A stretch of 64,000 bases of DNA from positions 1,426,001 through 1,490,000 of the forward strand of contig NIVC01000038.1 of NCBI GenBank assembly GCA_002269645.1, given 5' to 3'. Below are positions 1,045-64,000 of this stretch, piece by piece; the first letter of the stretch is position 1, and every line of letters starts with the position of its first letter. A program made the position numbers and the translations under genes. Under the pieces are notes generated by a model. The model searched no databases and had not been told where the DNA came from. It saw nothing but the letters and a program-made list of their open reading frames with translations. Origin of the DNA: Macrostomum lignano (lineage: Eukaryota).

Positions 1045-21000
<19,956 letters not shown>

Positions 21001-41516: not shown

Positions 41517-44500
41517 CTGGGAAAGGACTGGGAAATGGGAAAGGACAGTTCCCTTGCTGAGAAAGGGAACTGTCGCAGTCTAGGATGAAGGTACCCGCGC
41601 TAGGACTCAAGTCTGGGTAGGTCAACACTGGCGGCTCACACAGGCTCGCCTTCAGTTCCTGAAACGCATTCTCGTGAACTTGGCGCCAGACAAATTTCTC
41701 TGAACTTTTGGCTAAGGCGTACAGAGGCGTGGCTATGATAGAAAACCTGGGGACAAACTTTCTGTAATAATTAGCAAACCCCAGAAAGGATAACAGCTGC
41801 TTTTTGTCCCTAGGGGTACACCACTGTCGCACTGCTTCCGTCTTGGTGGGGTCCGCTTCAATCCCTCTCGAGGAGACCACGAATCCCAGAAACCTAAGCC
41901 TGTCTTTGAACAATTCACATTTAGATGGCCTGATCTTCAAGTTGGCTTTCCTAAGCTGCCAGAAAACAAGCGCTAGGTGGGATATCATCTCATCGTTATT
42001 CCTAGCCTTGATGATGATGTCGTCAAGGTAAATCAGGCTGACTCGCAACAGCAGTGGTCTGAAAACCTTATGCATAAGCTTAGCAAAACTGGCTGGGGCG
42101 GTCTTTATCCCGAAGGGAACAACGGTCCAACGGAAAGTCCCCTGAGGGCAGGAAAACGCGGTGAGATCGCGGTCAGCTTCCCTGATTCCTACTTGCCAGT
42201 ACGCGCTCGTCAGATCTAAGCTGCTGAATACGCTGGAGCCCGCCAAACTATCGAATGACTCTTCTATCAGCGGCACAGGAAATGAGCACGGCTTTATGTG
42301 CTTGTTTAGGGCGCGGTAGTCTACGCACAGGCGATACGTACCGTCCTTCTTTTTCACAAGCACAATTGGCGAAGACCAGTCAGAGTCACACTCCTCAACC
42401 ACTCCCTGATCTAAAAGCTGGGCAATATGCTTGTCTAAGAACTCTTTCTGGGCCGGCGTTGTCCGCCTGGACGGTTGGGAAATCGGGCGGCAACTCGGGT
42501 CTTTGAGCTCGATCGTCATCTCATGCAGCGTGGTCTTGCCTAGATCTGTTTCGGACTGAGAAATTTGACTAAGGAAATAATTTAACATTTTTACGGTGGT
42601 ATCCAGCTGCTTCTTAGTTAGGTTAGAGTCTAGCAAATTGAACTGGTTCATTAGCCACTTGGCTGTTCCTGGGTCTGGGTAGGGTAGTCTTGCCAGCTTG
42701 TCGTTAAGCAGATCTACCTTGTCGAAGCTGAAATCGCTTTCGTTTAGCCGGGTGCACACCACGCTCTCGTCGTCCCCTAGCTTCTTAAATGACGCTACCT
42801 CCTCACCCTTGGCAACAGTAATCTCTTCTTCACTGCTATTCAGGACCCTAACTAACACGTGGCTGGTGGGGCTGACCTGGTCTAGAGAATTAGCGACCAC
42901 GATGGCCGAATCTGAATTGAACAGCCTCGCGCTGACAACCCCATGGGCGTTGCTCTCGGCGTCTATGGCTCTAGCTGGGACCAGGGCTTCTGAGCGCGGC
43001 GGCAGGACCGTGTCGCAAGCGGCGACCACACGGTTCACGCTACAGATGTCACTAGATCCCCGCAGGGTTGGGACATTCTCCCCTGCGCAAGTCACACGGT
43101 CACAGGCCATGTCCATGACAATTTGGAAACTGCTGCAGAAATCCAGTCCTAAAAGCGTCTCACTCAGGGAGCCATCGATAACTAGGAAAATATGCTGCTT
43201 CTTCAGTTTGCCTAAGCTCAACTCACACTCGAGCTTTCCCAGGATTTCTGAGCTGGCTCCGTTGAACCCAGTCGCAGTTCGCTGGATTTGGGCGGGGGTG
43301 AAGACATTATTGATGGGATCCGCCTCTACTAGCCTGTCTCTTATCTTGGGGCAAATCAGCGATGCATTGGCTCCAGGATCCAAAAGGGCCACGGTCTTCG
43401 TCTCTCCGACCTCAATCTGAACATAAAATCCCGCCTTGTAGTGGGGCAGGTCGGAAGAGGCCTCCGCACACTTGGGGTCTACCGAATCTGCAGTCACGCT
43501 GATGGCCCGGTCCCTGGTCTTTCCAGCTTCAGCAACTCGGCCGAAGGTCACATGGGTGCCCACTAGCTGGTGGTTTAAGGCCAGGTCCATCAGGGGCTGC
43601 ACTAGCTGGGACAGGTGCACGAAAACTGAGTCTCCGATTTGGGAGGACCGGACGAACCCGTAGGAATCCTTCCAGTGGGTCACTACCCCCCTCTCTCTGG
43701 GCGGTCTCGGGCTCGACTTCCCTCTGTCCTTTGGGTCGACGAACGGCTGCGGAGCCCTGAACTTCGAAGGTGGCGCACTGGCACCCGGCTCTCTGGGATA
43801 GGGACACTCTGCGATCAGATGGTCTGTCTCCCCACACCTAAAGCACTTCGGTGGCCTACGGTTCTTGTGATTATAGTTACTGGAGTTCAGGACATGCTGC
43901 GGTGGCTGAAAACTCTGGGCTCCAGGGTGTCTATTGTCGTTTACTGTCGTTTGCTGCTGACTTGACTGTTTCCTTTCAAGCTCCTTGATCCTTGCCTTCA
44001 GGGCTTGGATCTCGTCTGACTCAACACTACGGACTTTCGGCGGTTCTGCTAATTTGAGTAATTGCCTAGTTTGGGCGGCGTCTCGTGCCCTGTTTAAAAG
44101 TCTTTCGAGAGACGGCCTTGGCTTCTCTTGCAGCAAATTGATTAACTTTTCTGCGATTGACTTGTCAGTTAACCCATAGCAAAATCGCGTCCTAACTAAA
44201 GGCTCGTACTCATTGCGGCTTAAGTTCGCAGAGTTAGCAAGGCTAACGAGGCGATCGAAATATTCTTGAATACTTTCAGACTGCAGCTGCTGGGCGGAGG
44301 TAAGCTCTATATAAAACTGGTCCACATGCGTTGGTTCGCCGTACCGACCCTTAAGCTGCTTAACACCGGTTTCGAAAACTTTCTCGTGCAGTCTCTGGTT
44401 ATAGAAGTACTCTTGGCACTCTGGCGACAACGATGACAGCAGTACAGCTGTCCAGTGCTCGCGTCCTATGTTATTCGCTTCTAAGTACAGGCTGAACTGG

Positions 44501-44844
44501 GTCCACCAAATTTCGAATTTCATTTTGGGCGAATAGGCGGCTGGGGGCCTGAGCCGAGGGCTCGACTTTGAATACTTCACATTGTCACGGATCTCTGCCA
44601 AAGTTCTGGCCAGATCGCCCAGGGAAGTCTCGCACTCCTGCAGGTCACCTTCATCTGTCTCCGCCTCGTCATCACCAGCTGTCTCTGACAATCTAATTTT
44701 ACTGCCTACTGTCTCGCTTCTACCTCCTAGCTCTGTCTCCCCATTCCCACCTCCTGGCTCTGTCTCTCCACTTCTGCCTGTCCTAGCTCCACTCGCTGCT
44801 GGATCCTCTGTACTTGGCTTGGCTACCGACTCGGACTCTGCCAT
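41500..44844 (-). CDS. Gypsy Gag-(CCHC)-cold-shock domain-protease-dUTPase-like-RT polyprotein (1114 aa), ending at a frameshift early in RNase H
   Basis: CFRCGETDHLIAECP; GVVTHWKDSYGFV..VFVHLSQL; LLDPGANASLI; SPIVLVKKKDGTYRLCVDYRALN; YLDDII. Confidence 0.92.
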   Translation of the reverse strand: MAESESVAKPSTEDPAASGARTGRSGETEPGGGNGETELGGRSETVGSKIRLSETAGDDEAETDEGDLQECETSLGDLARTLAEIRDNVKYSKSSPRLRPPAAYSPKMKFEIWWTQFSLYLEANNIGREHWTAVLLSSLSPECQEYFYNQRLHEKVFETGVKQLKGRYGEPTHVDQFYIELTSAQQLQSESIQEYFDRLVSLANSANLSRNEYEPLVRTRFCYGLTDKSIAEKLINLLQEKPRPSLERLLNRARDAAQTRQLLKLAEPPKVRSVESDEIQALKARIKELERKQSSQQQTTVNDNRHPGAQSFQPPQHVLNSSNYNHKNRRPPKCFRCGETDHLIAECPYPREPGASAPPSKFRAPQPFVDPKDRGKSSPRPPRERGVVTHWKDSYGFVRSSQIGDSVFVHLSQLVQPLMDLALNHQLVGTHVTFGRVAEAGKTRDRAISVTADSVDPKCAEASSDLPHYKAGFYVQIEVGETKTVALLDPGANASLICPKIRDRLVEADPINNVFTPAQIQRTATGFNGASSEILGKLECELSLGKLKKQHIFLVIDGSLSETLLGLDFCSSFQIVMDMACDRVTCAGENVPTLRGSSDICSVNRVVAACDTVLPPRSEALVPARAIDAESNAHGVVSARLFNSDSAIVVANSLDQVSPTSHVLVRVLNSSEEEITVAKGEEVASFKKLGDDESVVCTRLNESDFSFDKVDLLNDKLARLPYPDPGTAKWLMNQFNLLDSNLTKKQLDTTVKMLNYFLSQISQSETDLGKTTLHEMTIELKDPSCRPISQPSRRTTPAQKEFLDKHIAQLLDQGVVEECDSDWSSPIVLVKKKDGTYRLCVDYRALNKHIKPCSFPVPLIEESFDSLAGSSVFSSLDLTSAYWQVGIREADRDLTAFSCPQGTFRWTVVPFGIKTAPASFAKLMHKVFRPLLLRVSLIYLDDIIIKARNNDEMISHLALVFWQLRKANLKIRPSKCELFKDRLRFLGFVVSSRGIEADPTKTEAVRQWCTPRDKKQLLSFLGFANYYRKFVPRFSIIATPLYALAKSSEKFVWRQVHENAFQELKASLCEPPVLTYPDLSPSAGTFILDCDSSLSQQGNCPFPFPSPFPARQER

Positions 44845-52611: not shown

Positions 52612-54926
52612 ATGTTGAAAGTCAGGCAATGCATTAATAAAATAGAAGTTTTGTTGTTGTCTAAGTGCTATCCAACTATTAAGCGCCCTTTTACGCTTCA
52701 AAATTCTCATTTTAATTTTTTTTGAAATTCTAGAAGCGATCAAATCTAGTTCGTCACATTTAGTTCCTGTTAGCTATATTTATATCTTATTCGTACACTT
52801 GCATTTTGACTTAATACGTATTTTGTGCACTTTTTGTTAAGGAAAGGAATTAAAAATTGTTCAAATTATATACGAAAAAATCATATTAGCTTAACTATGT
52901 GCAACTACGTGAGCCAAACGTGACCAACATAATTACCTAATAATAATGAGAGCTCATTTTCTTAATTGAGCATTCGACGTTTCGATGTTCTGTATGTTCT
53001 CATACAGTCATAAACCAAGAGTTAGAATAAGAGTTCATATAAAACAAACACATTTTTAGCAATAAAATTGTGTGATCATGATCCCAAGAAGCTTAATATA
53101 CTGTAAAATATTTTTAATTCAGCTATCAGAATGAGCTATAGCTACTGGCGAAGTACCATATCATGATTTGTCCTTCCTAAATAGTCTGAAGTAGGCCAAA
53201 AAGGACGGAATTTTATAGCTGAATCTGTAATATTTCGCATTCTGTCATATTCTGCAATAAAGTTTTTCCTATCTATTTTTTTCTGTCACATTGTCATATT
53301 TCAACATTTCTGTCACAATGTATACCCATGGATTAGTTTAGAGGCTAGACCAGCAAGAGAGCGTCTTGCTCCAGATAGATTAACTGTCAGGCCAAATCAG
53401 AAAAGTTATTCACAGAGGATAGCGGCGTTGTTTAACCCATTTAACCTATTACAGCCTAAGAACAAATTAACAATGGCCGACGCCCCATTGCGAGTATATG
53501 CTAAGAAGAAAATCTACGGCCAAAAGAGAAGGCATAAAGAGCAGGAAGACAACGAGCTCCCGCGAGTTAGGGCCGTACACATAGCAAATCAAGAAGAACA
53601 ATGTAAGAAGCACAAGCTGAGAGAAGAAGATAGCGAGCCGAAGGGGAATTTAGTTATCAATGTAGATTGATAACGCTCTTCATGGAGGAGATCCGGTAGC
53701 AGGAAGGAGTAGATCCCATCGACGAACAGGACGAGACCAACTGACGTGCCGGCCAGAGTAGAGCCAGCCTGGGCCTGCACCAGACTCGCTCGTAAACTAC
53801 GCAACACTACTCAGTGGACCTGGGCGAGGAGCCAGCCCCTGAGAGGACCGAAAGCAAACGGCAGGACAGCCCCGGCACGCAGGTGCGAAATTTGCGCAGG
53901 TGCCGCCGCGACCTTAAGCGATTTATTCTAACAACGGGACGAACGGGATAATTCAAGGCCGAGTTATCGGAGGCCTGCATTCAATTACTGGCCACTACCC
54001 CGCCGGCCACTACCCCGCCGAAGCGGTAAGGTGCTTCGAGATCACCTGCTCTTACTGCTTGCAGTACGCGGAAGGAAAGGTGAGAGGTTTAATTTGCATG
54101 AAGGCGACTACCGAACAACTCGAGTCCATTGCCGGCCAGATTGACCCAACTCACCGACTAATCCCGGTCAACGGGTTACTCTACCTATCTGCCCAGAATA
54201 CTCTAAACCTCCGGCCGGCTAAGAAGGACTGGGAAATCCAACTAGATAATTCTTCCGAAACAACATTATTTACACGTGCTCGATGCTATCATATTTTTCG
54301 TTTTTTTACCATCTTTCGGAATTTCTAAGAATAAATACCTTGCCAAAAATTTACCGCTTTTTTGCACCGCATTTTTTCGTGTGTTGTTGTTGTTAGTATA
54401 CACTTGCCATTCTGGACATGCTTAGTTGTCATTATTACTATAGAAATAGAAATACTATTCATAATAATTTCAACTTGCTTATGTAAGATGCTCGACATTT
54501 AGTATATCCGGCTAAGTATCATCGAAGTGCGCTCATTCATGTACTCATTACGTGACCAAATAATTTTACTGTGCATGTAATTAATATTTTCTTCTCACTT
54601 ACCTATACGCATATTCATAATAATTTCGTATGCTCACAACATTAAGTTATAAATCCAGTATATCGCTGGTAAGTGCATTAATATTTCCTTGTGCTTAACT
54701 AATTTCAAATACTTAAATAAATACAAATAATTAATGTACAAAAGAGGTTTTGCACATTTTGTAGTGAGGGGGAAATGTAGTAGAGCATTATTTTAGGAGT
54801 AGAATTAGACACGAGTTAAATATGCTTTTACGCTACTAACAGTAGTTTCAGCTAGGGGAAATAATTAGAGCAGGGGTAAATCGCTAACTTTGGGGTTTCT
54901 TTACAACTAAAGAGCAGTTGGGCTCC

Positions 54927-56458
54927 AAGCCCAAGACCAGAGCGGCAACGTTGGTGCGGGGCGTGGCGCAGCACAACGGTCCAACAACCAAGGACGCTCA
55001 TACGCGTCAGCTGCGGGTCAAGATAGAAATAGAAATTATCAAATTAATAATAATAATAACAATAATGCTGCACCTGGCCGGCAGAATGTTGTTCCCGTAG
55101 TACTTACTTTTGACGGCGACACCGGCGACAGCAGCTTTTCTCAAATTAGTTTTCTCAAGTGGTTGGCGGCCAATTTTCAGGGCAACGCCCGAGCCACGCT
55201 GACCAGGCCAACTAGCTCGAAAAACGGATATCTAGTCTTCCCAGCGACGCCCAGGGATCACCAGATCTTTCTCCGAGGGCATCTGAGGGAGCCGAACTTC
55301 AATAGCGTAGCGGTTAACCGTAGGCTGCTAAACGCCAGACCAACGCACAACAGACCCGCTGGCCGGCCACCTCCAGTTCAATCGGTGCACTCCGTGGTTG
55401 TTCGAGGAGTGCCGGTTGAGATCGAGATGCCGGCATTTATCCAGCACCTGCGGGAGGACGTTGGGTTGAAGGTCGTCTCAGCTAGCCGCATCACATCGCG
55501 AGCAAGTAATGAGCCGACTCACCTCGTCCGACTGTTTTTGCCAAATAAGAGCACTGCGGATGCATGCCTTGCAACAGGCATCGTATCGCAGTTTACTAGA
55601 TATGCCTGCAAACCGAGTAAGACTGCTGCTCCGGCTAGGGCGCTCCAATGCCGTAAGTGCCAGCGATTCGGCCACAGCGCGAACAGATGTCGTGCTGCTC
55701 CGCGCTGCAATATCTGTGCGGCGGCGCATCGCTGGCAAGAGTGCCCGAACCCGGAAGCAGCGAAATATGCCAACTGTGGTGAGGCCCACCGTGCAAATCA
55801 CCGAAACTGCCCGGTAGCGGCCGAGAAGCACGACCAGGCTGCCCGACGCGCTGCAGCCTTTCAAGCCGGTGCCCGGGAAGCCACGGTAGCAACAGCTCCG
55901 CCACAAGCACAGGCAGCAGCAGCAACTGAACGAGCTGCACCAATAGCAACGTCGGCGGCGACGGCAGCAACAGCAGCAGCAGCAGCGCCACCCGCCCCCG
56001 TACCACGACCTGCTTCGATGACTGCGCCTAGGCCGGCCGAGACCGCTGCACGGGCGTCAACGGCGACGGGGGGCAACGATGATGACTCGACCTGGCTCAC
56101 AGGCCGTGGCCTCCCTAGTCGAAAGCGCCCTGTGCGCGACTCGGCTGACTCGATTACTCAGACGCAGCCGCCAAGTGACTTGTCGCCAAATAACAGCGCG
56201 ATGCCCAATATGCTAGCCGAAATGGAAGCCATGGTAAGTGGGCTCCTTCCCAGGCTGGTTCAAGCACTCGTAGAGGTGCTCACGACCCTCGCGCCGAACC
56301 TAGTCGAACGGCCGCCTACTACTGATGGTACCGGTCATTCGTTGCCGGAAGTAGTAGGTAGGGTTCTGACCCGGGTCCTCGCGGGGGGGTCGGAAGATCA
56401 CCAAGGTTTTGGTCAGCTGCTTGGCGCCCCTCGGCGCTGGGTGGATGGCCAGACCTAG
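54927..56458 (+). CDS. ORF1 (RRM-like + 3 CCHC), open from the 5' junction with no start codon
   Basis: VVVRGVP..I..F..L...GLKVVSA.RI..LVRLF; QCRKCQRFGHSANRC, CNICAAAHRWQEC, (Y)ANCGEAHRANHRNCP. Confidence 0.85.
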
Positions 56459-56518
56459 ATAAAAATATATAGTGAATAACTTTCGGTAACAATGCGCAAG
56501 ATAGCTCTAACCCCACAG

Positions 56519-59258
56519 CCCTAGGGCTTAAGATCGCTCACCTAAACTGCAGGGGGATTAAAAGAATTTCGCTCACCGAAATTAAAAGAACTCAGGCTCT
56601 GGGTCTCAGACCAAAAGTTGGATATAGCTATGTTTTCTGAGACCATCCTGAAAAATACCCAAGTATGCACATTTCCGTGCTATGCTGCAGTGCGGTTTGA
56701 CCTTCCGAATACGAAGCGTGGACTCCTCCTTGTTCACTCCCCGAGGGTCAAGGTAGCTGACGTCCAGCTCTCGTATGACAACATCAACCATGAAGTTCTT
56801 ACCTGCACAGTCACCCCTCTTGACGGAGCTTGCCCTGCTTTTAAACTGGCCTTAGTCTATCGGTTACCATCGCCGGACAACCTTGATGTCGGACTAATGA
56901 CACGGCTGTCTTCGGCCAGGTTCTCCCTTATTATGGGTGACCTCAACGCCAGGCACAACTTTTTGGGGGGCGAGAGTCGCAACAACAGAGCGGGTCAACA
57001 GCTTCACGATTGGCTCTGCGGCGACACTATTCATCGTCCCACCGTACTCAACCAACCAGGTCAATTTACCAGGATTGCCCACAGGAACGGCACGGTCTCT
57101 CGGAATGTGCTGGACCTTGGTCTGGCCTCCAGTGACCTAGTCCCCTACATCCAGGACTTCAAAGTGGGTGATGACCTGAATAGTGACCACCTTCCAATTA
57201 TTCTCACCCTGGCGAGCAACTCCCCAGACTGGCACGGGCCGGAGAAGGCCCGAAATTTCGCCAAAGCCAACTGGGAGGAGTTTTAGAACTCGTTGATGGA
57301 GAAACTGGTTAACAAGTGGCCCCCAGACCTCAACACGAGGCAGCAAATCGATGCGGAGGTCGACACCATCGCGAGTGCTATCCAGGAAACCATTGAGCAA
57401 AATGTCCCGGTCAGAAAAGGCCGTAGAGCCCTCCCTCAAAGGATCATTGCAATGATCAAGGAGAGGAGGAGGCTCCGGCGACTCTTTCACAGTACCAGGG
57501 ACGATAACTTCAGGCTCCTTGCGAACAGAAAGGCAAATGAGATCAAGAGTGCCATCCACGCATTTGAGCAAAGCTAATTTACTGAGCTGTGCGAAAAAAT
57601 TGTAGAAAAAAGTCAATGCCGGAATGTCAAAGATTTCTGGCAGGACACAAAAAACTAATGGGGCGCAACAAGGGCACCACTATCCCGTCCTTGAATGATG
57701 GCGCTACCCACGCACACACAGACTCTGACAAAGCTGATATGCTTGCGAGAGCACTTGACGCCAAAATGCGCCCGATTCCATCAACGGATGAAGGTCTGAA
57801 AAAGAAGGTTGAGCAGACTATGAAGCTCCCGCTATTCAGGCCTGTCCCACCGGGCAAAAAACCGCATATGGGGCACCCACTTGAGGCTCCCTTCTCCGTC
57901 ACTGATACTCTTTGGGAGTTGGATCACCTCAAGACGGACAGTGCTCCGGGCCTGGACAAAGTGCAAAACTGCGTCCTGAAGTATGGCCTGGAGCCCATTG
58001 CGGTTACGCGCATAACAAAACTCTTCAACGACTGTTACCGGACAGGGATCTTCCCATCGCAGTGGAAGAAAGCGGTAGTCACCATGATACCCAAGCCGGA
58101 CAAACCGCCTGAATCCCCAGGTTCCTATCGGCCCATCAGCCTGACCTCCTGCCTTGGCAAGGTCTTCGAGAAGCTATTGGTGAGGAGGCTGATGAAACAT
58201 CTTGAGGGCCAAGGTATCCTCGGAGCGGATCCGTGCGCCTACAGGAAGGTCCACTCGACGTACGACAACCTGGTCCGCCTCGTCCAGGACGTCCAGGTAG
58301 GCAAAGCCAAACACAAAAGATTGCTGGCCATTCTTCTTGACGTGCAAGCGGCGTTCGACTCTGTGTGGTACGACTTCCTAAGGTTTAGGATGCATGAAGT
58401 CGACACACCGGACGCCCTCGTCAGGATCTGCTCTGACTACCTAGCAGACAGGCTAATGCAGGTGAAGGTCAACGGGGCGCTCAGCCAGTTGTACGAGTTG
58501 CAGGCGGGGGTCCCGCAGGGCGGCATTCTAAGCCCCTTCCTTTACCTGCTCTTCATCAGCACCATGCCACGGCCACAACATCCAAACCTTAAACGCAGCC
58601 AATTCGCCGACGACATGGCCATCTGGGCCTCGGCGGACTCCTTTGCTGGCCTCAAAACGCTCCTGCAACCCTACCTTGACCAAGTGTGGAACTGGTGTGG
58701 AGGCAGGGGATCAAGATCAATGCCGGCAAGAGTCAGGCTATCGCATTCAATTATAAGCCAACTCAGCGGCTCGATCTTCGCCCCAAGCTGAAACTTGGTG
58801 GCACGAGTCTTGAATACCAAGAAGAAGTCCGGTTCCTTGGCATGAACCTGGACTCCAGGCTGACCCTGAACTCTCATATTGACAGAGTTGTCAGCCACGG
58901 CCGGGCGCTTGCCTTGTCGATCAACCGCATTGCTAAGCTAACCCGGCTGAGCAGTAATACCCTAAAGATGCTTTATAGGGCCTATGTGGAGAGTGTGCTG
59001 ACATACGGCGCCCCCATTCTCAATATCATCGCCCCTAGCAACCTCAACAAGTTGCAAAAAATCCAAAACCTAGCCCTTAGGATATGTTATGGTGCCCCCA
59101 GCTACACGCAAGTGGCCTACCTTCACGAATTGGCGGCTATCCCCATGCTGGCTGATAGGATCCAGGCCCTTGGTGTAGGATGGCTGTCCAAGATGAAGGC
59201 CGCTGGGCACCATGACTTTCATATCGAGCCAGAGCTTCCTAGGGCGGCTCGCAACTGA
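56519..59258 (+). pseudogene. ORF2 (APE endonuclease + RT), several stops and frameshifts
   Basis: HLNCRG..FSET..MGDLNA..LDL..SDHLP; APGLD..YRPISLTSCLGKVFEK..LDVQAAFD..GVPQG..QFADD..RFLG. Confidence 0.9.
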
Positions 59259-60781
59259 CCTCCAGTGCTGAACCGGCTATCGGACAGCCTGAAAAGGAGG
59301 CAAGTAAGTAAGTTAGCTGCAGTGAGCGCGGCGGCCCGCGCGGATAATAACCCGCCCTAAACTAACCCTAATTAAGCTCCAAACTAGTATGCGCGTGCCA
59401 TGCCATCGGCTTCCCCACCTTTTCGGAATTCTAAATCTTCTTCCCCTTTCCACCCTCTTCAGTATAAAAAAATCCATAAAAAATTTCTTGCTTTATTTCC
59501 TTTGCCTTCTTCTCCCCTTCTCATATAAATGCCGTATGCCAGCGCAAAACTACTCATATCAAAATACATTGCGGCTAAATATAAAATGGTGAGCGAGTGC
59601 TTGGCTGGTTGGGGAGTGGCCTACAACCCGGATGAAATCTGGGGAGCTGAACCAGTACACTTTTCCTACCTGTGATCGCTCCTGCTTATATTGTGATGCG
59701 CCGCCGCCTTTTGTATTGTTTTATATTTAGTACTGCCGATTTTACAATCCAATATCTACATGCGCGCCTTTTTACAACTTGGCCAAATTGCGCTTTTTAT
59801 CAGGCTTTTGCCACTTTTTATACACCCAAATTATTTTTATTCATATACCAATATTGTTTTTATTTACTACATTTTACCCATCTAGGACGCCATACCCCAA
59901 CTAAATTATTTTGTGAAATGTCTGCTACTTGTAGTAGTCATTTTTATTCTTATTTCTTATTTCTTTCCAATATATACTTTTTCTTTTTATTCATCAATAA
60001 CTCAAATATCCTTTACTTCTTACTTTTATCCTAAAATGTCTGCACTACTCCCTTTACTGTATGGTCCAGATCTTTGTGAGGACCCCTCTCTACTAGAATT
60101 CCCTCTATTTTAGTTCAAAATAATTTTAGAATCCAAAATGTAAATATCAATATTCATCGTGTTTTTAAACTCGCGTACCAATACTCGTATTAATTTTAAA
60201 CATGCATAATAAATCGGCAGAGCCCTACTTGGGCTGATCCGAGGTGCCCATTACTTGCACCATCGTTTAACAACAACAAAGAGCAGTTGGGCTCCTTAGA
60301 GCAGCCCTTGGTCCGTAGTTGCTTTGATAACTTAAAATCAATTAAGTAGTGAGCTACTAAAGGTATCCACAGTGTGGGCCTCGGGTAGCTCTTGCTTAAT
60401 TGTGCTTAAGCATCTGGGGTGACTACTCTCCTGGCGTCGGCATCGACCTCGGCAGTGACTTTCGGCGACCTCGGCTTCCGCGGCGACTTCAGCGACTCCG
60501 GCCTCGTCAGCGGCTTCTCGGCGCCTGTAGCCTCGGCGACTTCGACGGCCCGTTGTCTCGGCGGCTCGGCTGGTCGGCAGCTCGGTGACTCGTCAGCGCG
60601 GCGCCAGGTGCCTGCAATTGTTCGGCCAGCCTCGCGCGACGTCTGCAACACGGCGCCAGGTCTACCTGCCTAGTAGATACCAGAGCATAGCATCGTTTTA
60701 AGGACTTTTCTTGTACTCTCTAGAATTAGCTCTACTTTAAGTAGTATCATTTGATTTTTAAAACTTTTATTAGTTTTAGAA

Positions 60782-62746
60782 ATGGCCAGCTTGACAGAAA
60801 TGATCAATGGCACCCAGAGATTATCAAACTAGTCACCTGGCTCTACGTTGAACTGGGATTACCACTCTTCAACTCCTGTCTTATCAACTTCTATGAAGAT
60901 GGTAACACGACTATTCCATGGAACGCCGACAACGAGCCTGAGCTTGGAGTCAACCCTACTACGCTCGTATAGCCTCTATCTCGTTAGGTGCTCAAAGAGA
61001 GTTAGTAGTCAAGGCCAACACCTCAAAAATATTGTGTTCAAACAACACCTGGCCAGCGGCAGCGTTCTCATTATGAGTGGCTCAACCCAGCAGCACTTCT
61101 AACATTGCATCACGAAGGACCCAAAGGTCAAAAATATGAGAATCGACTTAACTTTCCGAACAACTCAAGACCCGGCACCGATCACGCCGCACTTCAATCC
61201 TTGCGTGTGTCCAGCAGATGATGCCATTGAACAGCAGCCAATCACCTGTGACCTAGACAATGAAGAGTCAATTCGCCTAAAAGCTCAAGAAGAAAAAGCC
61301 AACTTTGAGCGCATTAGACAATTAAGCCAATCCAGCACTAGTTCTTATCGCCAGCACAATCAATCTAACAACCAAACTAAAGCTAAGGGGTCTGCACCGG
61401 TAATTTTCGAAGTCGCCTAGAAGGGAAGGACCCCATCCAGTTCGAATGGTTGCTCAAGACCAATTTTCCTAACATCAGGGTCAAATCTGTCAAAGAATTG
61501 TACCATTCATCTGGTTACATAGTAATTCCTGAACATCCTAAAGACTTCAATGTACTCCTAAATGGGCCGCTTAAAGTAGACTCCATCAATGGGCAAAAAG
61601 TTACTCGCAGACTTGCCTCTAAACGACCAACCCGTCAAGGCGATGATCGATCACAAATTCTAGGACCTCTCAAGGCACCAAATGTACACTCATTCATAGT
61701 AAAAATGTAAAAAATGCGGTTGATGTCAGCGGCCTAGCGAAACACCTCTCGGAGGGTGACCAGCAGCTTCCAATTGATGGGGCTGTCCGCATCTACTCGA
61801 AGGCTACCGGTCAAGCTACCCCCTTTGTCCGCCTCTTCACTAAATGCCGTGGCGCCATGGACCACTGCATTGAATATGGCATCTACCTTGGACTGGTCCG
61901 GTCCGCTGTGAAGCCTCAACCAGCCTTCCACCAGTCAAAGCGATTCAATGCAAACGTTGCCAAGGCTTTGGTCACCTCGAGACTCGATGCACAGCTGGTT
62001 TCAAGTGCAACAAATGTGCTCAAGACCACTACTCTGGCGATTGTCCAAAGGAGCACAAGTTCAAGTGCGCAAATTGCAAAGGATAGTACCCGGCTTATTC
62101 CTACAAATGTCCAATGGTCAAGAAGGCCAACGAAGCTGCTACAAGTAAAGAACACGAGCGCATTAACAACTTAAAACTAAAACAAAAACAAAAACAAACT
62201 TACCGGAATAACCAGTTGCCATTTGGGAGCCAGACCCTTGGGGAGGTTTTCGGCGTTCCAGGTCCGCAGTCCTATGCCGAGATGTTGCGTCCCAAACCAG
62301 TTCTGCCATCCATGGGTCCAATTGCCTACTCCAACCGAGCTGCTCAGGCTTTCATCTCAGCCTCGGCTCAGCCTGCTGACTCTCTGGCCGCCGCCGCTGC
62401 CGCCGCTGCCAACCATCAAGCGCTGCTTGGTGCAACCAATCCATCTGAGTTCACAACAGCTGCTCCAGCCAATCCGGTCTCGACGCAATCTGGAGTTGAT
62501 TCTACTAATCAATCAGGACCATGTGAGAGGGGCCTTTTCTCTCGGGAAGACGTGCTCGAGGTTGCGTTGCAGGCGCTTGACCGACTCATGAGCATAGAAC
62601 CAGGACGGATGTTCACCCCCTGGGAGGCGGGGCAACTTGTCTTCCGGGTGGTGTCTAAAGTCGTAAGGGTGTTCAGGAATCAGAGAGTGCCTGTTGCAGA
62701 GTCAGGGGACACCAAAGTCGCGCAAGCGAACGGAGGTGGAACCTGA
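60782..62746 (+). pseudogene. LINE-2 ORF1: AlkB-like 2OG-Fe(II) dioxygenase + RRM-like region + 3 CCHC zinc knuckles
   Basis: Reconstructed across frameshifts: FNSCLINFYEDG..IPW(N)ADNEPELG.NP/IASISLGAQRE/L.SGSVLIMSGSTQQHF*HCITK..MRIDLTFR; then APVIFEV..; QCKRCQGFGHLETRC, CNKCAQDHYSGDC, CANCKG*YPAYSYKCP. Confidence 0.85.
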
Positions 62747-63011
62747 ACTCTCTGATTATAAGTTGCTTAGCTTAGTTCAATACGATATTCAATTCTACTC
62801 GTAAAACTCCTACGACAAATACCAAAAGTCACTCCGTTGTGCGGGACTCCCTCAACATTGGGCATCTGAACTGTAACTGGCTCAGCAACAAAATCTATGA
62901 AATAATTTCATGGCTAAATAATGAGGACTTAGATATAGAACTATTCTCCGAAATTGGCTTAGTTGATACAAACCCTTTCTTTGTTCAAGACTACGCTATC
63001 CTTAGGTTTGA

Positions 63012-63813
63012 ACAACAACAACAAGGTACTGCTCCCGCCGGCCACGCAGTAGCCAGAAAGGGGGGAGCAGTCAGAAAGCGCGTCTCTGGGCCATTGCCCT
63101 CAGGAAGTCGCATCCCCCTGCTTTGTCCGGGGCGCCAGCGTCACTCAAAAGTCGGTCAGGGTATCGCACCGTTCGCCCTTGGCCTCGCCTCCGCGGTCCC
63201 TGCAGCTTGAGCAGCAGCACGTCGTGTAGCGGCTCAGGACAGCGGGCCTCCGACCGGATGACGTGGCCAGCCAGTCGAAGTCGCCGCCCGCGCAGCAGGT
63301 CAGAAGGCCGCGTCAGGCGCGCCCTAGTGTAGAGCGCGGCATTGGTCTCGCTGCCTCTCCAAGGCGTCCGTCAGGGTCCAAGTCTCGGCGTTGTACAACA
63401 GGACAGTCTCGACGACTGCCTGAAACAGCCGAGCCTTGAGCCCGTCGTCCAGGGCCTCAGATTGGAGCACGGAGCGCACAGATCGAAATGCGGCCCAGGC
63501 CAGTCCTCGTCGTCTCTTCAGGTCGTCGGCAACGTCCGGCACGGAACCGCCGAGGTACACAAAGCGCTCGCAGCGGGTAAGCATAAATACATTCCCGACA
63601 GCGTCTCGGTAATTGATCTCAGCCGGCAAGTCGGAGGGCACCGTGAACACTACCGTCTTCCGCGCGTTCAGCTTAAGGCCGACCCGCGACGCTGCCGCCG
63701 TCAGGCCATCAAGCAGCCGCTGGGCACCTTCAGCCGTCGATGAAAGTAGCGCGAGGTCGTCCGCGTAGCCGAGAACGGAGAGCCGCTTCTCCGGGTGCCA
63801 AACCTCAAACCTC
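63012..63813 (-). mobile_element. 5'-truncated RTE-clade LINE inserted into LINE-2 ORF2
   Basis: YADDLAL..GLKLN..KT..F.YLG..LLYNAETW..RRLRLAGHV..R.RGQGR; (GTT)n tail; 9-bp TSD taggtttga at 63003-11 and 63814-22. Confidence 0.9.
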
Positions 63814-64000
63814 TAGGTTTGACAAACCTCACTGTAGAAGAGGACTTGCCGTAGCTTATAAAAATAATCTTAACATTATGAATATTAAAAAGTTTTATGA
63901 CAACAGTCACCATGAATACATTAGTTTTGAGGTTTTCTTAAAACATAACAGGTTGAACAAGCTTAATATAGTCCTCTTCTACAGGGCTCCCAACCCCACC

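What the first reader, a model, noticed from the sequence alone, without database searches (positions are those of the whole stretch)
60782..62746. LINE retrotransposon whose ORF1 carries an AlkB-family nucleic-acid demethylase domain
Seen: ~60800-61160 reconstructs, over two frameshifts and one stop, to a complete ALKBH2/3-type fold: FNSCLINFYEDG, W-x-A-D at the HxD position (here N, AAC, one change from CAC), IASISLG..R, GSVLIM.G.TQ, distal His at 61103 and RIDLTFR. The same uninterrupted frame (61136-61420) runs from RIDLTFR into APVIFEV, which is homologous to VPVVLTF at the start of the RRM-like region of the neighbouring LINE's ORF1. Three CCHC knuckles and a normal APE ORF2 follow. So the enzyme is part of ORF1p rather than an adjacent gene. 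Established: AlkB enzymes oxidatively remove m1A/m3C (some m6A) from single-stranded nucleic acids, and AlkB domains are known passengers in replicase polyproteins of several plant RNA viruses. Inference: an ORF1p that coats the retrotransposon RNA could remove RT-blocking methyl lesions or host-imposed methyl marks from its own template. I am not aware of a description of AlkB in this ORF1 type, but I cannot check the literature here. This copy is decayed, so any function must be tested on the family consensus.
Basis: partly seen in the sequence, partly recalled or inferred. Interest (0 to 1): 0.88.

Follow-up and report, generated by a model that had tools for sequence, protein, structure and literature searches.

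The report
Flatworm LINE with AlkB-fused ORF1
This is a dead, partly deleted copy of a flatworm jumping gene (a LINE) whose RNA-binding protein carries a built-in AlkB-type demethylase; intact, recently active copies exist elsewhere, and I found no published description of this combination.

Summary
The AlkB-like sequence is real. The frameshift-corrected peptide from 60784-61159 hits Pfam 2OG-FeII_Oxy_2 (E 5e-22), and its best solved relative is human ALKBH3. It is not a complete fold. This copy has lost about 480 bp, removing the start codon and the first ~147 codons, so about 60 of ~190 fold residues are missing. It also has two frameshifts, one stop codon and His>Asn in the HxD motif.

In Macrostomum lignano, two 7.1-kb copies are 99.8% identical, lie in different flanks and each have their own target-site duplication. 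Each encodes one uninterrupted 938-aa ORF1: complete ALKBH2/3-type domain, disordered linker, two RRM-like domains, three CCHC knuckles. An intact APE+RT ORF2 follows. Divergent intact families with the same layout occur in unidentified sequencing runs. HxD..H..R..R is conserved, and AlkB has the lowest dN/dS in ORF1 (0.12).

AlkB is also fused to a different ORF1 type in another LINE clade, and an AlkB ORF lies upstream of a Penelope-like element.

The likely role, not tested, is removal of RT-blocking m1A/m3C methyl lesions from the element's own RNA or cDNA. Literature searches found only plant-virus and orchid Gypsy precedents.

The parts
60278..60313 (+). End of the upstream (neighbouring) LINE's 3' tail: the hairpin motif AAAGAGCAGTTGGGCTCC plus about 18 nt. 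The AlkB LINE begins directly after it.
   Evidence: The same 18-mer lies at 54909, just before the neighbour LINE's own 5' end. GAGCAGTTGGGCTC sits at the same distance upstream of the L006 copy. The head-to-tail reading is inference.
60314..60778 (+). 5'UTR of the AlkB LINE: a GC-rich repetitive core (~60400-60660) followed by an AT-rich spacer.
   Evidence: Window 60303-60660 is 69% identical in nucleotides to L001 9449-9819. The spacer aligns with L001 up to about 9961. The element start CGTAGTTGC at 60314 corresponds to CGTCGTTGCC at the L001/L006 start.
60779..60783 (+). Junction of an internal deletion of about 480 bp. Relative to L001 ~9962-10440 it removes the ORF1 ATG, the N-terminal ~90 aa and the first ~60 residues of the AlkB fold.
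   Evidence: DNA and protein alignments to L001. The Pfam match covers only profile positions 94-194/194.
60784..60960 (+). AlkB remnant, piece A: GQLDRNDQWHPEII...FNSCLINFYEDGNTTIPWNADNEPELGVNPT. The HxD histidine is replaced by Asn (AAC, 60922-60924).
60966..61028 (+). AlkB remnant, piece B (RIASISLGAQRELVVKANTSK), in another frame. Frameshifts flank it at ~60961-60965 and ~61029-61030.
61031..61159 (+). AlkB remnant, piece C: ...LASGSVLIMSGSTQQHF*HCITKDPKVKNMRIDLTFR. It holds the in-frame TAA at 61100-61102 (Gln in relatives), the distal His at 61103-61105 and the 2OG-binding RxxLTFR at 61139-61159.
61160..61393 (+). Linker between AlkB and the RRM-like region. It includes the conserved ITCDLDNEESIRLKAQEE helix. 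It is much shorter here than the ~170-aa Q-rich linker of the M. lignano copy.
   Evidence: Alignment. The AF2 model has a helix at 312-333 followed by disorder at 334-481 in P0005.
61394..61898 (+). Two RRM-like domains of ORF1. They are broken by TAG at 61418-61420 plus a frameshift there, and by further frameshifts at ~61705-61712 and ~61899-61903.
   Evidence: 57% amino-acid identity to L001 ORF1. AF2 gives beta-alpha-beta-beta-alpha-beta topology for P0005 483-560 and 580-645. No Pfam hit; the RRM assignment rests on topology only.
61949..62110 (+). Three CCHC zinc knuckles. The third is interrupted by TAG at 62084-62086.
   Evidence: 69% identity to L001.
62114..62746 (+). C-terminal part of ORF1 (Ala-rich disordered stretch, then a helical end) and the ORF1 stop TGA at 62744-62746.
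   Evidence: ORF 62114-62746. Alignment to L001 and P0001.
62848..63012 (+). Start of ORF2 (APE endonuclease), first part. No ATG is retained.
   Evidence: tblastn with L001 ORF2 residues 11-65, 62% identity.
63013..63814 (-). A 5'-truncated fragment of an unrelated LINE (C-terminal part of its RT) inserted into the APE. It has a (TTG)n tail and a TAGGTTTGA target-site duplication.
   Evidence: The minus-strand ORF 63324-63650 looks RT-like but had no Pfam hit.
63815..64000 (+). ORF2 APE continues up to the window end.
   Evidence: tblastn with L001 ORF2 residues 63-123, 59% identity.

Best explanation
Window ~60314-64000 holds a dead copy of a flatworm (Macrostomum-type) APE-class LINE family of about 7.1 kb.

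ORF1 protein of the intact family. It is a single polypeptide with these parts in order:
- a disordered N-terminus;
- a complete ALKBH2/3-type Fe(II)/2-oxoglutarate dioxygenase;
- a disordered linker;
- two RRM-like domains;
- three CCHC knuckles;
- a helical C-terminus.

State of the window copy. A ~480-bp deletion has removed the start codon and the first third of the AlkB fold. It carries His>Asn at the iron-binding HxD, at least five frameshifts and three stop codons in ORF1. A foreign insertion splits ORF2. This copy does nothing.

Proposed mechanism for intact elements (inferred, not shown).
1. ORF1p binds the RNA it was translated from.
2. That tethers the AlkB domain to the retrotransposon RNA and, during target-primed reverse transcription, to the single-stranded cDNA.
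3. The domain oxidatively removes N1-methyladenine and N3-methylcytosine type methyl groups.
4. These block reverse transcriptase and base pairing, so their removal raises the yield of full-length copies.

Plant RNA virus replicases carry AlkB domains for which the same role is proposed.

Shown here: the sequence identity, the architecture, conservation of the catalytic residues, purifying selection, and recent transposition.

Inferred: enzymatic activity, the substrate, action in cis, and any benefit to retrotransposition.
For: Identity of the domain.
- Window peptide: Pfam 2OG-FeII_Oxy_2, E 5e-22.
- Intact L001 domain: ALKBH3 at E 2e-25 and ALKBH2 at 2e-19 by sequence.
- AF2 model of P0005: AlkB domain pLDDT 85-94.
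- Foldseek: about 200 aligned columns, TM 0.78-0.87 to human ALKBH3 and ALKBH2. ALKBH5, ALKBH6 and E. coli AlkB are far behind at E ~1e-9.

Fusion to ORF1.
- Uninterrupted 938-, 969-, 962- and 843-codon ORF1s in L001/L006, L002, L011 and L007, each followed by an APE or APE+RT ORF2.
- No 2A skipping motif in any of them.

Family membership of the window copy.
- The 5'UTR is 69% identical to L001.
- ORF1 is 47-69% identical to L001 domain by domain.

Recent activity.
- L001 and L006 are 99.83% identical over 7123 bp.
- They have different flanks and each has its own 18-21 bp target-site duplication.

Selection.
- H201, D203 and R223 are invariant across 53 aligned AlkB sequences; H259, R271 and R277 are nearly invariant. 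The TE-borne sequences are included.
- L002 versus L011 dN/dS: AlkB 0.12, RRM-like 0.17, CCHC 0.17, linker 0.44.
- Between L001 and L002, AlkB is the best conserved part of ORF1: 47% identity against 35% for RRM-like and 20% for the C-terminus.

Analogy. BFVD structure matches include AlkB domains inside closterovirus, vitivirus and other RNA-virus replicases.

Substrate. ALKBH2/3-type enzymes repair m1A and m3C, and ALKBH3 prefers single-stranded DNA and RNA. This is established knowledge and was not tested here.
Against: - No biochemical or expression data exist for this protein.
- dS is close to saturation (about 2.1) in the only pair where dN/dS could be computed, and fully saturated in the others. 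The ratios are therefore rough.
- Related LINEs of the same clade do without AlkB: the neighbour at 54930-60313 and P0052, P0056, P0070. The domain is an accessory, not a requirement.
- Nothing here separates an RNA substrate from a DNA substrate, or lesion repair from removal of a deliberate host mark.
- The organisms behind the Logan and JGI contigs are unknown.
Confidence: 0.6

Rival explanations
1. Epitranscriptomic counter-defence. The ORF1p AlkB domain erases a regulatory mark that the host places on transposon RNA to destabilise or silence it (m6A, or a deliberately written m1A/m3C). The orchid Gypsy-encoded ALKBH5-like protein is proposed to do this.
For: - An orchid Ty3/Gypsy lineage encodes an AlkB protein with m6A demethylase activity on ssRNA in vitro (PMC9289625).
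- The same paper cites work showing that m6A affects ERV and L1 RNA fate in mammals.
- AlkB is tied to retroelements in several contexts here: CCHC-type LINEs, a coiled-coil ORF1 LINE (L009), and next to a Penelope-like element (L010). The rough tree suggests more than one origin.
Against: - By sequence and structure the domain belongs with ALKBH3/ALKBH2 (E 2e-25; TM up to 0.87), not with the m6A erasers. ALKBH5 matches only at E ~1e-9 with TM ~0.6.
- No m6A-related partner is encoded by the element.
Confidence: 0.2
2. DNA-side repair. The domain acts on DNA rather than RNA. It would remove 3mC or 1mA from the nicked target, the single-stranded cDNA or the new copy. One possible source of such damage is off-target methylation by the host's DNMT1/DNMT3.
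For: - ALKBH2 and ALKBH3 are DNA repair enzymes; ALKBH2 scores almost as well as ALKBH3 structurally.
- M. lignano is reported to retain DNMT1, DNMT3 and ALKB2, and DNMTs generate 3mC as a by-product (PMC9246332).
Against: - ORF1p is primarily an RNA-binding chaperone, and fusion to it places the enzyme on RNA first.
- Sequence scores favour ALKBH3 (single-strand preference) over the duplex-specific ALKBH2.
- No test here separates RNA from DNA.
Confidence: 0.13
3. Non-catalytic or host-directed role. The AlkB fold would serve only as an extra nucleic-acid-binding or multimerisation module, or it would act on host RNAs such as tRNAs to favour translation of the element.
For: ALKBH3 is known to act on tRNA (general knowledge). 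The domain sits at the N-terminus, far from the RNA-binding core, across a long disordered linker.
Against: All iron- and 2OG-binding residues are conserved in every intact lineage, across divergence that has saturated synonymous sites. This argues for retained catalysis.
Confidence: 0.05
4. Artefact or one-off event. A host ALKBH3 pseudogene or exon lies next to a LINE by chance, or was captured by this single copy, and the apparent fusion comes from frameshift 'correction' and gene-model errors.
For: The window copy is broken and had to be stitched from three frames. Several UniProt models (P0001-P0003) are fragmentary or mis-spliced.
Against: - Raw DNA of six independent loci shows continuous ORFs across the AlkB-ORF1 junction with no introns.
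- Two copies have target-site duplications that bracket the whole unit.
- The layout is kept between families only about 40-50% identical.
Confidence: 0.02

Closest known systems
Human ALKBH3 and ALKBH2 (AlkB-family Fe(II)/2OG dioxygenases that repair 1-methyladenine and 3-methylcytosine)
   Same: - Best sequence and structure relatives of the domain: E 2e-25 and 2e-19; Foldseek TM 0.78-0.87; 32-34% identity over about 200 residues.
- HxD...H iron triad and RxNLTFR 2OG-binding motif are conserved in intact copies.
   Different: - Here the domain is the N-terminal module of a retrotransposon ORF1 protein, not a stand-alone host repair enzyme.
- The nearest stand-alone animal ALKBH3-like proteins are only about 38-45% identical in the core.
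- Activity is untested.
AlkB domains inside replicase polyproteins of plant RNA viruses (Betaflexiviridae, Closteroviridae, some potyvirids)
   Same: A selfish RNA-templated replicon carries an AlkB domain fused into a protein that handles its own RNA. Structural matches to such replicases were recovered. The proposed role, cleaning methyl lesions from the template, is the same.
   Different: - Those are RNA viruses of plants, with the domain placed between methyltransferase and helicase.
- This is an animal non-LTR retrotransposon, with the domain on the RNA chaperone (ORF1p), and the polymerase to be helped is a reverse transcriptase.
- Identity is lower (14-20% in the Foldseek alignments).
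Orchid (Phalaenopsis) Ty3/Gypsy elements encoding an ALKBH5-like m6A demethylase (PMC9289625)
   Same: This is the only retrotransposon-borne AlkB I found in the literature. It shows that retrotransposons can fix an AlkB domain and that it can be enzymatically active.
   Different: - It is an LTR retrotransposon of plants, with AlkB in a separate extra ORF.
- It belongs to the ALKBH5/ALKBH9B (m6A eraser) branch.
- Ours is a LINE of animals, fused within ORF1p, and of ALKBH2/3 type.
Jockey/CR1-group LINE ORF1 proteins with RRM-like domains and three CCHC knuckles
   Same: - The C-terminal two-thirds of the protein has this layout.
- AlkB-less relatives with the same layout exist: P0052, P0056, P0070 and the neighbour LINE at 55145-56458.
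- ORF2 is APE+RT without RNase H.
- The 3' end has a hairpin plus a short microsatellite-like tail.
   Different: An enzymatic AlkB domain of about 190 aa plus a long disordered linker is added at the N-terminus. The RT clade was not formally assigned here.

Membership tests
AlkB family (ALKBH2/3 branch) of Fe(II)/2-oxoglutarate dioxygenases | Significant match to the AlkB-type profile (Pfam PF13532 2OG-FeII_Oxy_2) above the curated threshold | tested here: met
   Window peptide 79.4 bits (cut-off 31.2), E 5e-22. Intact relatives 98-108 bits.
AlkB family (ALKBH2/3 branch) of Fe(II)/2-oxoglutarate dioxygenases | Iron-binding HxD...H triad | tested here: not met
   Window copy: the first His is Asn (AAC, 60922-60924). 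The Asp and the distal His (61103) are present, but the codon before that His is a stop. In intact family members the triad is complete: WHSDDE...QHAV.
AlkB family (ALKBH2/3 branch) of Fe(II)/2-oxoglutarate dioxygenases | 2-oxoglutarate-binding arginines in the RxNLTFR motif | tested here: met
   RIDLTFR at 61139-61159. R271 and R277 are nearly invariant in the 53-sequence alignment.
AlkB family (ALKBH2/3 branch) of Fe(II)/2-oxoglutarate dioxygenases | Complete double-stranded beta-helix core with the N-terminal nucleotide-recognition part | tested here: not met
   Window copy: only profile positions 94-194/194 remain and about 60 N-terminal fold residues are deleted. Intact relative P0005: complete, about 200 columns aligned to ALKBH3/2 with TM 0.78-0.87.
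AlkB family (ALKBH2/3 branch) of Fe(II)/2-oxoglutarate dioxygenases | Oxidative demethylation of m1A/m3C in nucleic acid | not testable with these tools
   Needs an enzyme assay with a protein from an intact copy.
APE-type non-LTR retrotransposon (LINE) | ORF2 encoding an apurinic-like endonuclease followed by a reverse transcriptase | tested here: inconclusive
   In the window only the first ~123 APE residues are visible (62848-63012 and 63815-64000) before the window ends. In L001, L006 and L007, ORF2 of 948-950 aa has Exo_endo_phos plus RVT_1.
APE-type non-LTR retrotransposon (LINE) | Target-site duplications and a defined 3' tail flanking whole copies at different loci | tested here: met
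   Family level: L001 and L006 have different flanks, their own 18-21 bp duplications and an ATGAAA-type tail. The 3' end of the window copy lies outside the window.
APE-type non-LTR retrotransposon (LINE) | ORF1 nucleic-acid-binding protein upstream of ORF2 (here RRM-like domains plus CCHC knuckles) | tested here: met
   CCHC motifs read directly, with a Pfam zf-CCHC hit in P0048. The RRM-like fold is inferred from AF2 topology only.
Orchid Gypsy AlkB-bearing LTR retrotransposons | LTRs, gag-pol with integrase, and an ALKBH5-like domain in a separate ORF | tested here: not met
   No LTRs or integrase. The domain is in ORF1 and is ALKBH3/2-like, with ALKBH5 only at E ~1e-9. It is an analogue, not a member.

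The most novel reading that the evidence does not exclude
AlkB capture is a recurrent retroelement strategy, not a curiosity of one family. Here AlkB is tied to at least three retroelement contexts: CCHC-type LINEs in several deep lineages, a coiled-coil-ORF1 LINE of another clade, and an ORF next to a Penelope-like element. This would point to an unrecognised host restriction, or an endogenous damage burden, based on base methylation (m1A/m3C or similar) of retroelement RNA or cDNA, which the elements counter with their own eraser. A side consequence is that 'ALKB2/3 present' calls in comparative genomics of flatworms may partly reflect transposon-borne copies.
Probability: 0.25. Interest if true: 0.85.

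Novelty: new variant of a known kind. Interest (0 to 1): 0.7.

Why it matters
LINE ORF1 proteins are regarded as RNA-binding chaperones. The known accessory domains I recall are esterase, PHD, RRM and zinc knuckles (general knowledge).

A nucleic-acid demethylase built into ORF1p, conserved under purifying selection and present in recently active copies, would be a new kind of accessory. It would be a retrotransposon-encoded activity that edits the chemical state of its own template.

It offers a natural, genetically tractable test of whether methyl lesions or marks on retrotransposon RNA or cDNA limit reverse transcription in animals. Macrostomum lignano has transgenesis. The test is to compare wild-type and HxD-mutant elements.

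It also links three separate observations into one theme of replicons carrying their own AlkB: plant RNA viruses, orchid Gypsy elements and these LINEs.

Finally, it warns that AlkB gene counts in repeat-rich invertebrate genomes can be inflated by transposon copies.

Tried and rejected
- Exact-protein look-ups for P0001, P0003 and the window's 1114-aa Gypsy ORF found nothing. The window's source assembly could therefore not be named. The species assignment (Macrostomum-type flatworm) rests only on the closest protein relatives.
- Megablast of all fetched loci against the window gave no high-identity shared repeats.
- The third homolog search, with the alignment as query, scored only 8000 candidates and returned no new fusion proteins. 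The exhaustive representative search did.
- dN/dS for window versus L001 and for L001 versus L002 could not be computed because pS is 0.78-0.83, which is saturated. Only L002 versus L011 gave usable, still rough, values.
- L001 versus L006 differ by just 2 sites in ORF1 and 3 in ORF2, too few for a selection test.
- Rfam on 59800-60800 found nothing that explains the shared 18-mer.
- I looked for a 2A 'NPGP' skipping site between AlkB and the rest of ORF1 and found none.
- I suspected that L009's ORF1 C-terminal part is L1-type (Transposase_22). Pfam gave only generic coiled-coil hits, so that stays unverified.
- Searching papers for the SRA run numbers gave nothing.
- The RT clade (CR1, Jockey or other) was not formally assigned, because no reference RT set is available in these tools.
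Full report
**1. What is in the window**

- Piece A, 60784-60960: ...DQWHPEIIKLVTWLYVELGLPLFNSCLINFYEDGNTTIPWNADNEPELGVNPT.
- Piece B, 60966-61028: RIASISLGAQRELVVKANTSK.
- Piece C, 61031-61159: ...LASGSVLIMSGSTQQHF*HCITKDPKVKNMRIDLTFR.

The joined peptide hits Pfam 2OG-FeII_Oxy_2 at E 5.3e-22, 79 bits against a cut-off of 31. It also hits human ALKBH3 (E 1.4e-14) and ALKBH2 (E 4e-10) among solved structures.

The Pfam match covers only profile positions 94-194 of 194. The 'complete fold' claim therefore fails for this copy.

Downstream, again over frameshifts and two TAG stops, lie an RRM-like region, three CCHC knuckles and a C-terminal region ending at TGA 62744-62746. An APE-type ORF2 then starts near 62848. 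It is split by a minus-strand LINE fragment at 63013-63814, which has its own TAGGTTTGA duplication, and it runs off the window.

**2. Relatives elsewhere**

The corrected ORF1 peptide found only four proteins among 5.8 billion. Three are from the flatworm Macrostomum lignano and carry PF13532. Searching again with one of them found two more informative proteins:
- P0005, an NCBI M. lignano protein of 927 aa.
- P0007, from Logan assemblies, 757 aa.

The DNA of these loci shows the architecture directly.

*L001 (M. lignano NIVC01001213.1).* The 5'UTR is followed by one uninterrupted 938-codon ORF1 at 10001-12817, then a 950-codon ORF2 at 12843-15695. ORF2 has Exo_endo_phos and RVT_1 domains.

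*L006, a second M. lignano locus.* It carries the same element at 99.83% identity over 7123 bp. Both ORFs are intact, the flanks are unrelated, and it has its own 18-21 bp target-site duplication. L001 also has its own duplication. These are independent, recent insertions of a ~7.1-kb LINE.

*L002-L005, L011 and L007/L008.* These come from unidentified sequencing runs SRR316283xx-4xx. They carry three further families with intact AlkB-ORF1 of 969, 962 and 843 aa. In each case an APE or APE+RT ORF2 follows. Their ORF2 proteins are about 40% identical to that of L001, so this is the same clade with deep divergence.

**3. How the window copy relates to the family**

Its 5'UTR (60303-60660) is 69% identical in nucleotides to L001 9449-9819. 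The AT-rich spacer aligns up to about L001 9961. Protein homology resumes at about L001 codon 150.

The copy is therefore full-length at its 5' end but has an internal deletion of about 480 bp. The deletion took out three things:
- the ATG;
- the ~90-aa N-terminal region;
- the first ~60 residues of the AlkB fold (strands and helix at residues 92-146 in the model).

The ATG at 60783 is a chance start of a 16-codon ORF in another frame.

Domain identities to L001 are 60% (AlkB C-terminal part), 57% (RRM-like), 69% (CCHC) and 47% (C-terminus). This makes it an old member of a related subfamily.

**4. The domain in intact copies**

AlphaFold2 on P0005, using a 14-sequence alignment, gave the following:
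- AlkB domain, residues 91-282: pLDDT 85-94.
- Helix at 312-333, then a long disordered Q-rich linker.
- Two beta-alpha-beta-beta-alpha(-beta) modules at 483-560 and 580-645, which is RRM-like topology.
- CCHC region: low confidence.
- C-terminal helices.

Foldseek against the PDB put human ALKBH3 and ALKBH2 on top: E 5e-18 to 1e-16, about 200 aligned columns, target TM 0.78-0.87, 32-34% identity. ALKBH6, ALKBH5 and E. coli AlkB were well behind at E ~1e-9. By sequence, ALKBH3 scores E 2e-25 and ALKBH2 scores 2.4e-19.

In a 53-sequence alignment of AlkB cores that includes all transposon-borne versions, H201, D203 and R223 are invariant. H259, R271 and R277 are nearly invariant.

**5. Selection**

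Synonymous sites are saturated between window/L001 and L002 (pS 0.78-0.83). Non-synonymous change in AlkB stays at pN 0.28-0.38. AlkB is also the best-conserved ORF1 segment between L001 and L002: 47% identity, against 35% for RRM-like, 41% for CCHC and 20% for the C-terminus.

The closer pair L002/L011 gives these Nei-Gojobori dN/dS values:

| ORF1 segment | dN/dS |
|---|---|
| AlkB (210 codons) | 0.12 |
| RRM-like | 0.17 |
| CCHC | 0.17 |
| C-terminus | 0.34 |
| N-terminus | 0.35 |
| Linker | 0.44 |

dS is high (about 2.1 for the AlkB segment), so the values are approximate. The ranking is nevertheless clear.

No 2A skipping motif separates AlkB from the rest of ORF1.

**6. AlkB is an add-on, found in more than one retroelement context**

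ORF1 proteins of the same clade without AlkB exist. Examples are P0052, P0056 and P0070 and the LINE immediately upstream in the window. That neighbour's ORF1 lies at 55145-56458, and its ORF2 is 37-42% identical to that of L001.

The exhaustive HMMER search and follow-up turned up further contexts:
- *L009.* A metagenome contig in which AlkB is fused to a coiled-coil ORF1 without CCHC, followed by an APE+RT ORF2. That ORF2 is only 21-23% identical to L001 and L007, so it belongs to a different LINE clade.
- *L010.* A 1012-aa AlkB-containing ORF directly upstream of an ORF with RT and GIY-YIG domains, which is Penelope-like.
- *A second M. lignano group, Mlig027759g7 / Mlig005735g1.* The longer model ends in IPPIVLRC, the motif that opens the RRM-like region in this ORF1 type.

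In a rough neighbour-joining tree without support values, the CCHC-type LINE AlkBs, the Mlig027759 group and the Penelope-associated AlkB cluster together. The L009 AlkB falls elsewhere. That suggests more than one capture, but it needs a proper phylogeny.

**7. Mechanism**

Shown:
- an ALKBH2/3-type catalytic domain with all cofactor ligands;
- covalent linkage to the RNA-binding ORF1p of a recently active LINE;
- purifying selection on that domain.

Established for the enzyme family (general knowledge):
- ALKBH2/3 oxidatively remove 1-methyladenine and 3-methylcytosine.
- ALKBH3 prefers single strands, including RNA.
- These lesions block polymerases.
- Plant-virus AlkB domains repair RNA.

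Inferred: ORF1p coats its own RNA in cis, so the tethered AlkB cleans RT-blocking methyl groups from the template and/or the single-stranded cDNA. This would raise the yield of full-length copies.

Alternatives are erasing a host regulatory mark, DNA-side repair of DNMT-generated 3mC, and a non-catalytic role. They are listed with their tests in the rival explanations. The ALKBH3/2 affinity, rather than ALKBH5/FTO, makes m6A erasure the less likely reading.

**8. Comparison with what is known, and novelty**

Full-text searches for AlkB together with each of the following found no description of an AlkB domain in a LINE or Penelope-like element:
- non-LTR retrotransposon and ORF1;
- LINE and reverse transcriptase;
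- Repbase;
- Penelope-like elements;
- Macrostomum;
- the Pfam family name.

The nearest precedent is an orchid Ty3/Gypsy lineage with an ALKBH5-like m6A demethylase in a separate ORF (PMC9289625). AlkB domains in plant RNA-virus replicases are the functional analogue, and structural matches to them appear.

I therefore rate this a new variant of a known kind: a replicon-borne AlkB in a new element class, a new fusion partner and a new AlkB branch. The library does not hold subscription-only papers or Repbase/Dfam entries, so an earlier mention cannot be excluded.

**9. Verdict**

The interpretation, AlkB as part of ORF1p, is supported by intact and recently mobile relatives. The function is a reasoned inference.

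Interest lies in the family, not in this relic.

Noticed in passing
window 54909-54926 and 60278-60295; L006 5427-5440: The exact 18-mer AAAGAGCAGTTGGGCTCC (a GAGC/GCTC hairpin) sits about 19 nt upstream of the 5' end of both LINEs in the window and of the L006 copy. The ~70 nt before it in L006 and at window 54840-54926 are homologous and resemble a LINE 3'UTR end. My reading is that these are head-to-tail LINE arrays: the neighbour LINE's 3'UTR runs from 59260 to 60313, and AlkB LINEs tend to insert into the 3' tails of related LINEs. Rfam found nothing there.
   Followed up: partly
window 63013-63814 (- strand): A 5'-truncated fragment of another LINE (C-terminal part of its RT, ORF 63324-63650) with a (TTG)n tail and a TAGGTTTGA target-site duplication. 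It is inserted into the APE domain of the AlkB LINE.
   Followed up: partly
window 54930-60313 (+ strand): Neighbouring LINE of the same clade without AlkB: ORF1 at 55145-56458 (RRM-like plus CCHC), and ORF2 in pieces at 56573-59237, 37-42% identical to L001 ORF2. No ATG is visible for its ORF1. It has a long (~1 kb) AT-rich 3'UTR.
   Followed up: partly
window 38760-44844 (- strand): A nearly intact Ty3/Gypsy-type LTR retrotransposon gag-pol, in two ORFs of 1114 and 910 aa separated by a single break near 41492-41500. Domains: zf-CCHC, aspartyl protease, RVT_1, RNase H, integrase. There is a weak, sub-threshold cold-shock-domain hit in the gag part.
   Followed up: no
L010 2120-7398 (Logan SRR19430222): A 1012-aa ORF with an AlkB domain (residues 530-665) lies directly upstream, on the same strand, of an ORF with RT and GIY-YIG domains (Penelope-like element). 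Whether the two belong to one element is not established.
   Followed up: partly
L009 248-4609 (JGI metagenome 3300086443): A LINE of a different clade (ORF2 21-23% identical to L001) whose ORF1 is AlkB plus a coiled coil plus an uncharacterised C-terminal domain, with no CCHC. Its AlkB does not cluster with the CCHC-type LINE AlkBs in a rough tree, which suggests an independent capture.
   Followed up: partly
M. lignano proteins P0053 (Mlig027759g7) and P0193 (Mlig005735g1): A second M. lignano AlkB group, about 40% identical to the L001 AlkB. The gene numbering suggests many copies. The longer model ends with IPPIVLRC, the start of the RRM-like region, so this is probably another AlkB-ORF1 LINE family. 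Reports that M. lignano 'retains ALKB2' (PMC9246332) could be affected by such transposon copies.
   Followed up: no
L007 4346-4717: An extra 123-aa ORF with no Pfam hit lies between ORF1 and ORF2 of one AlkB LINE family and overlaps the ORF2 start by 8 nt.
   Followed up: no
window 60400-60660; L001 9560-9820: The 5'UTR of the family contains a conserved GC-rich stretch of short repeats (CGGC/GCGAC units). Some UniProt gene models (P0002) translate it as if it were coding. Its function (promoter, RNA structure) is unknown.
   Followed up: no
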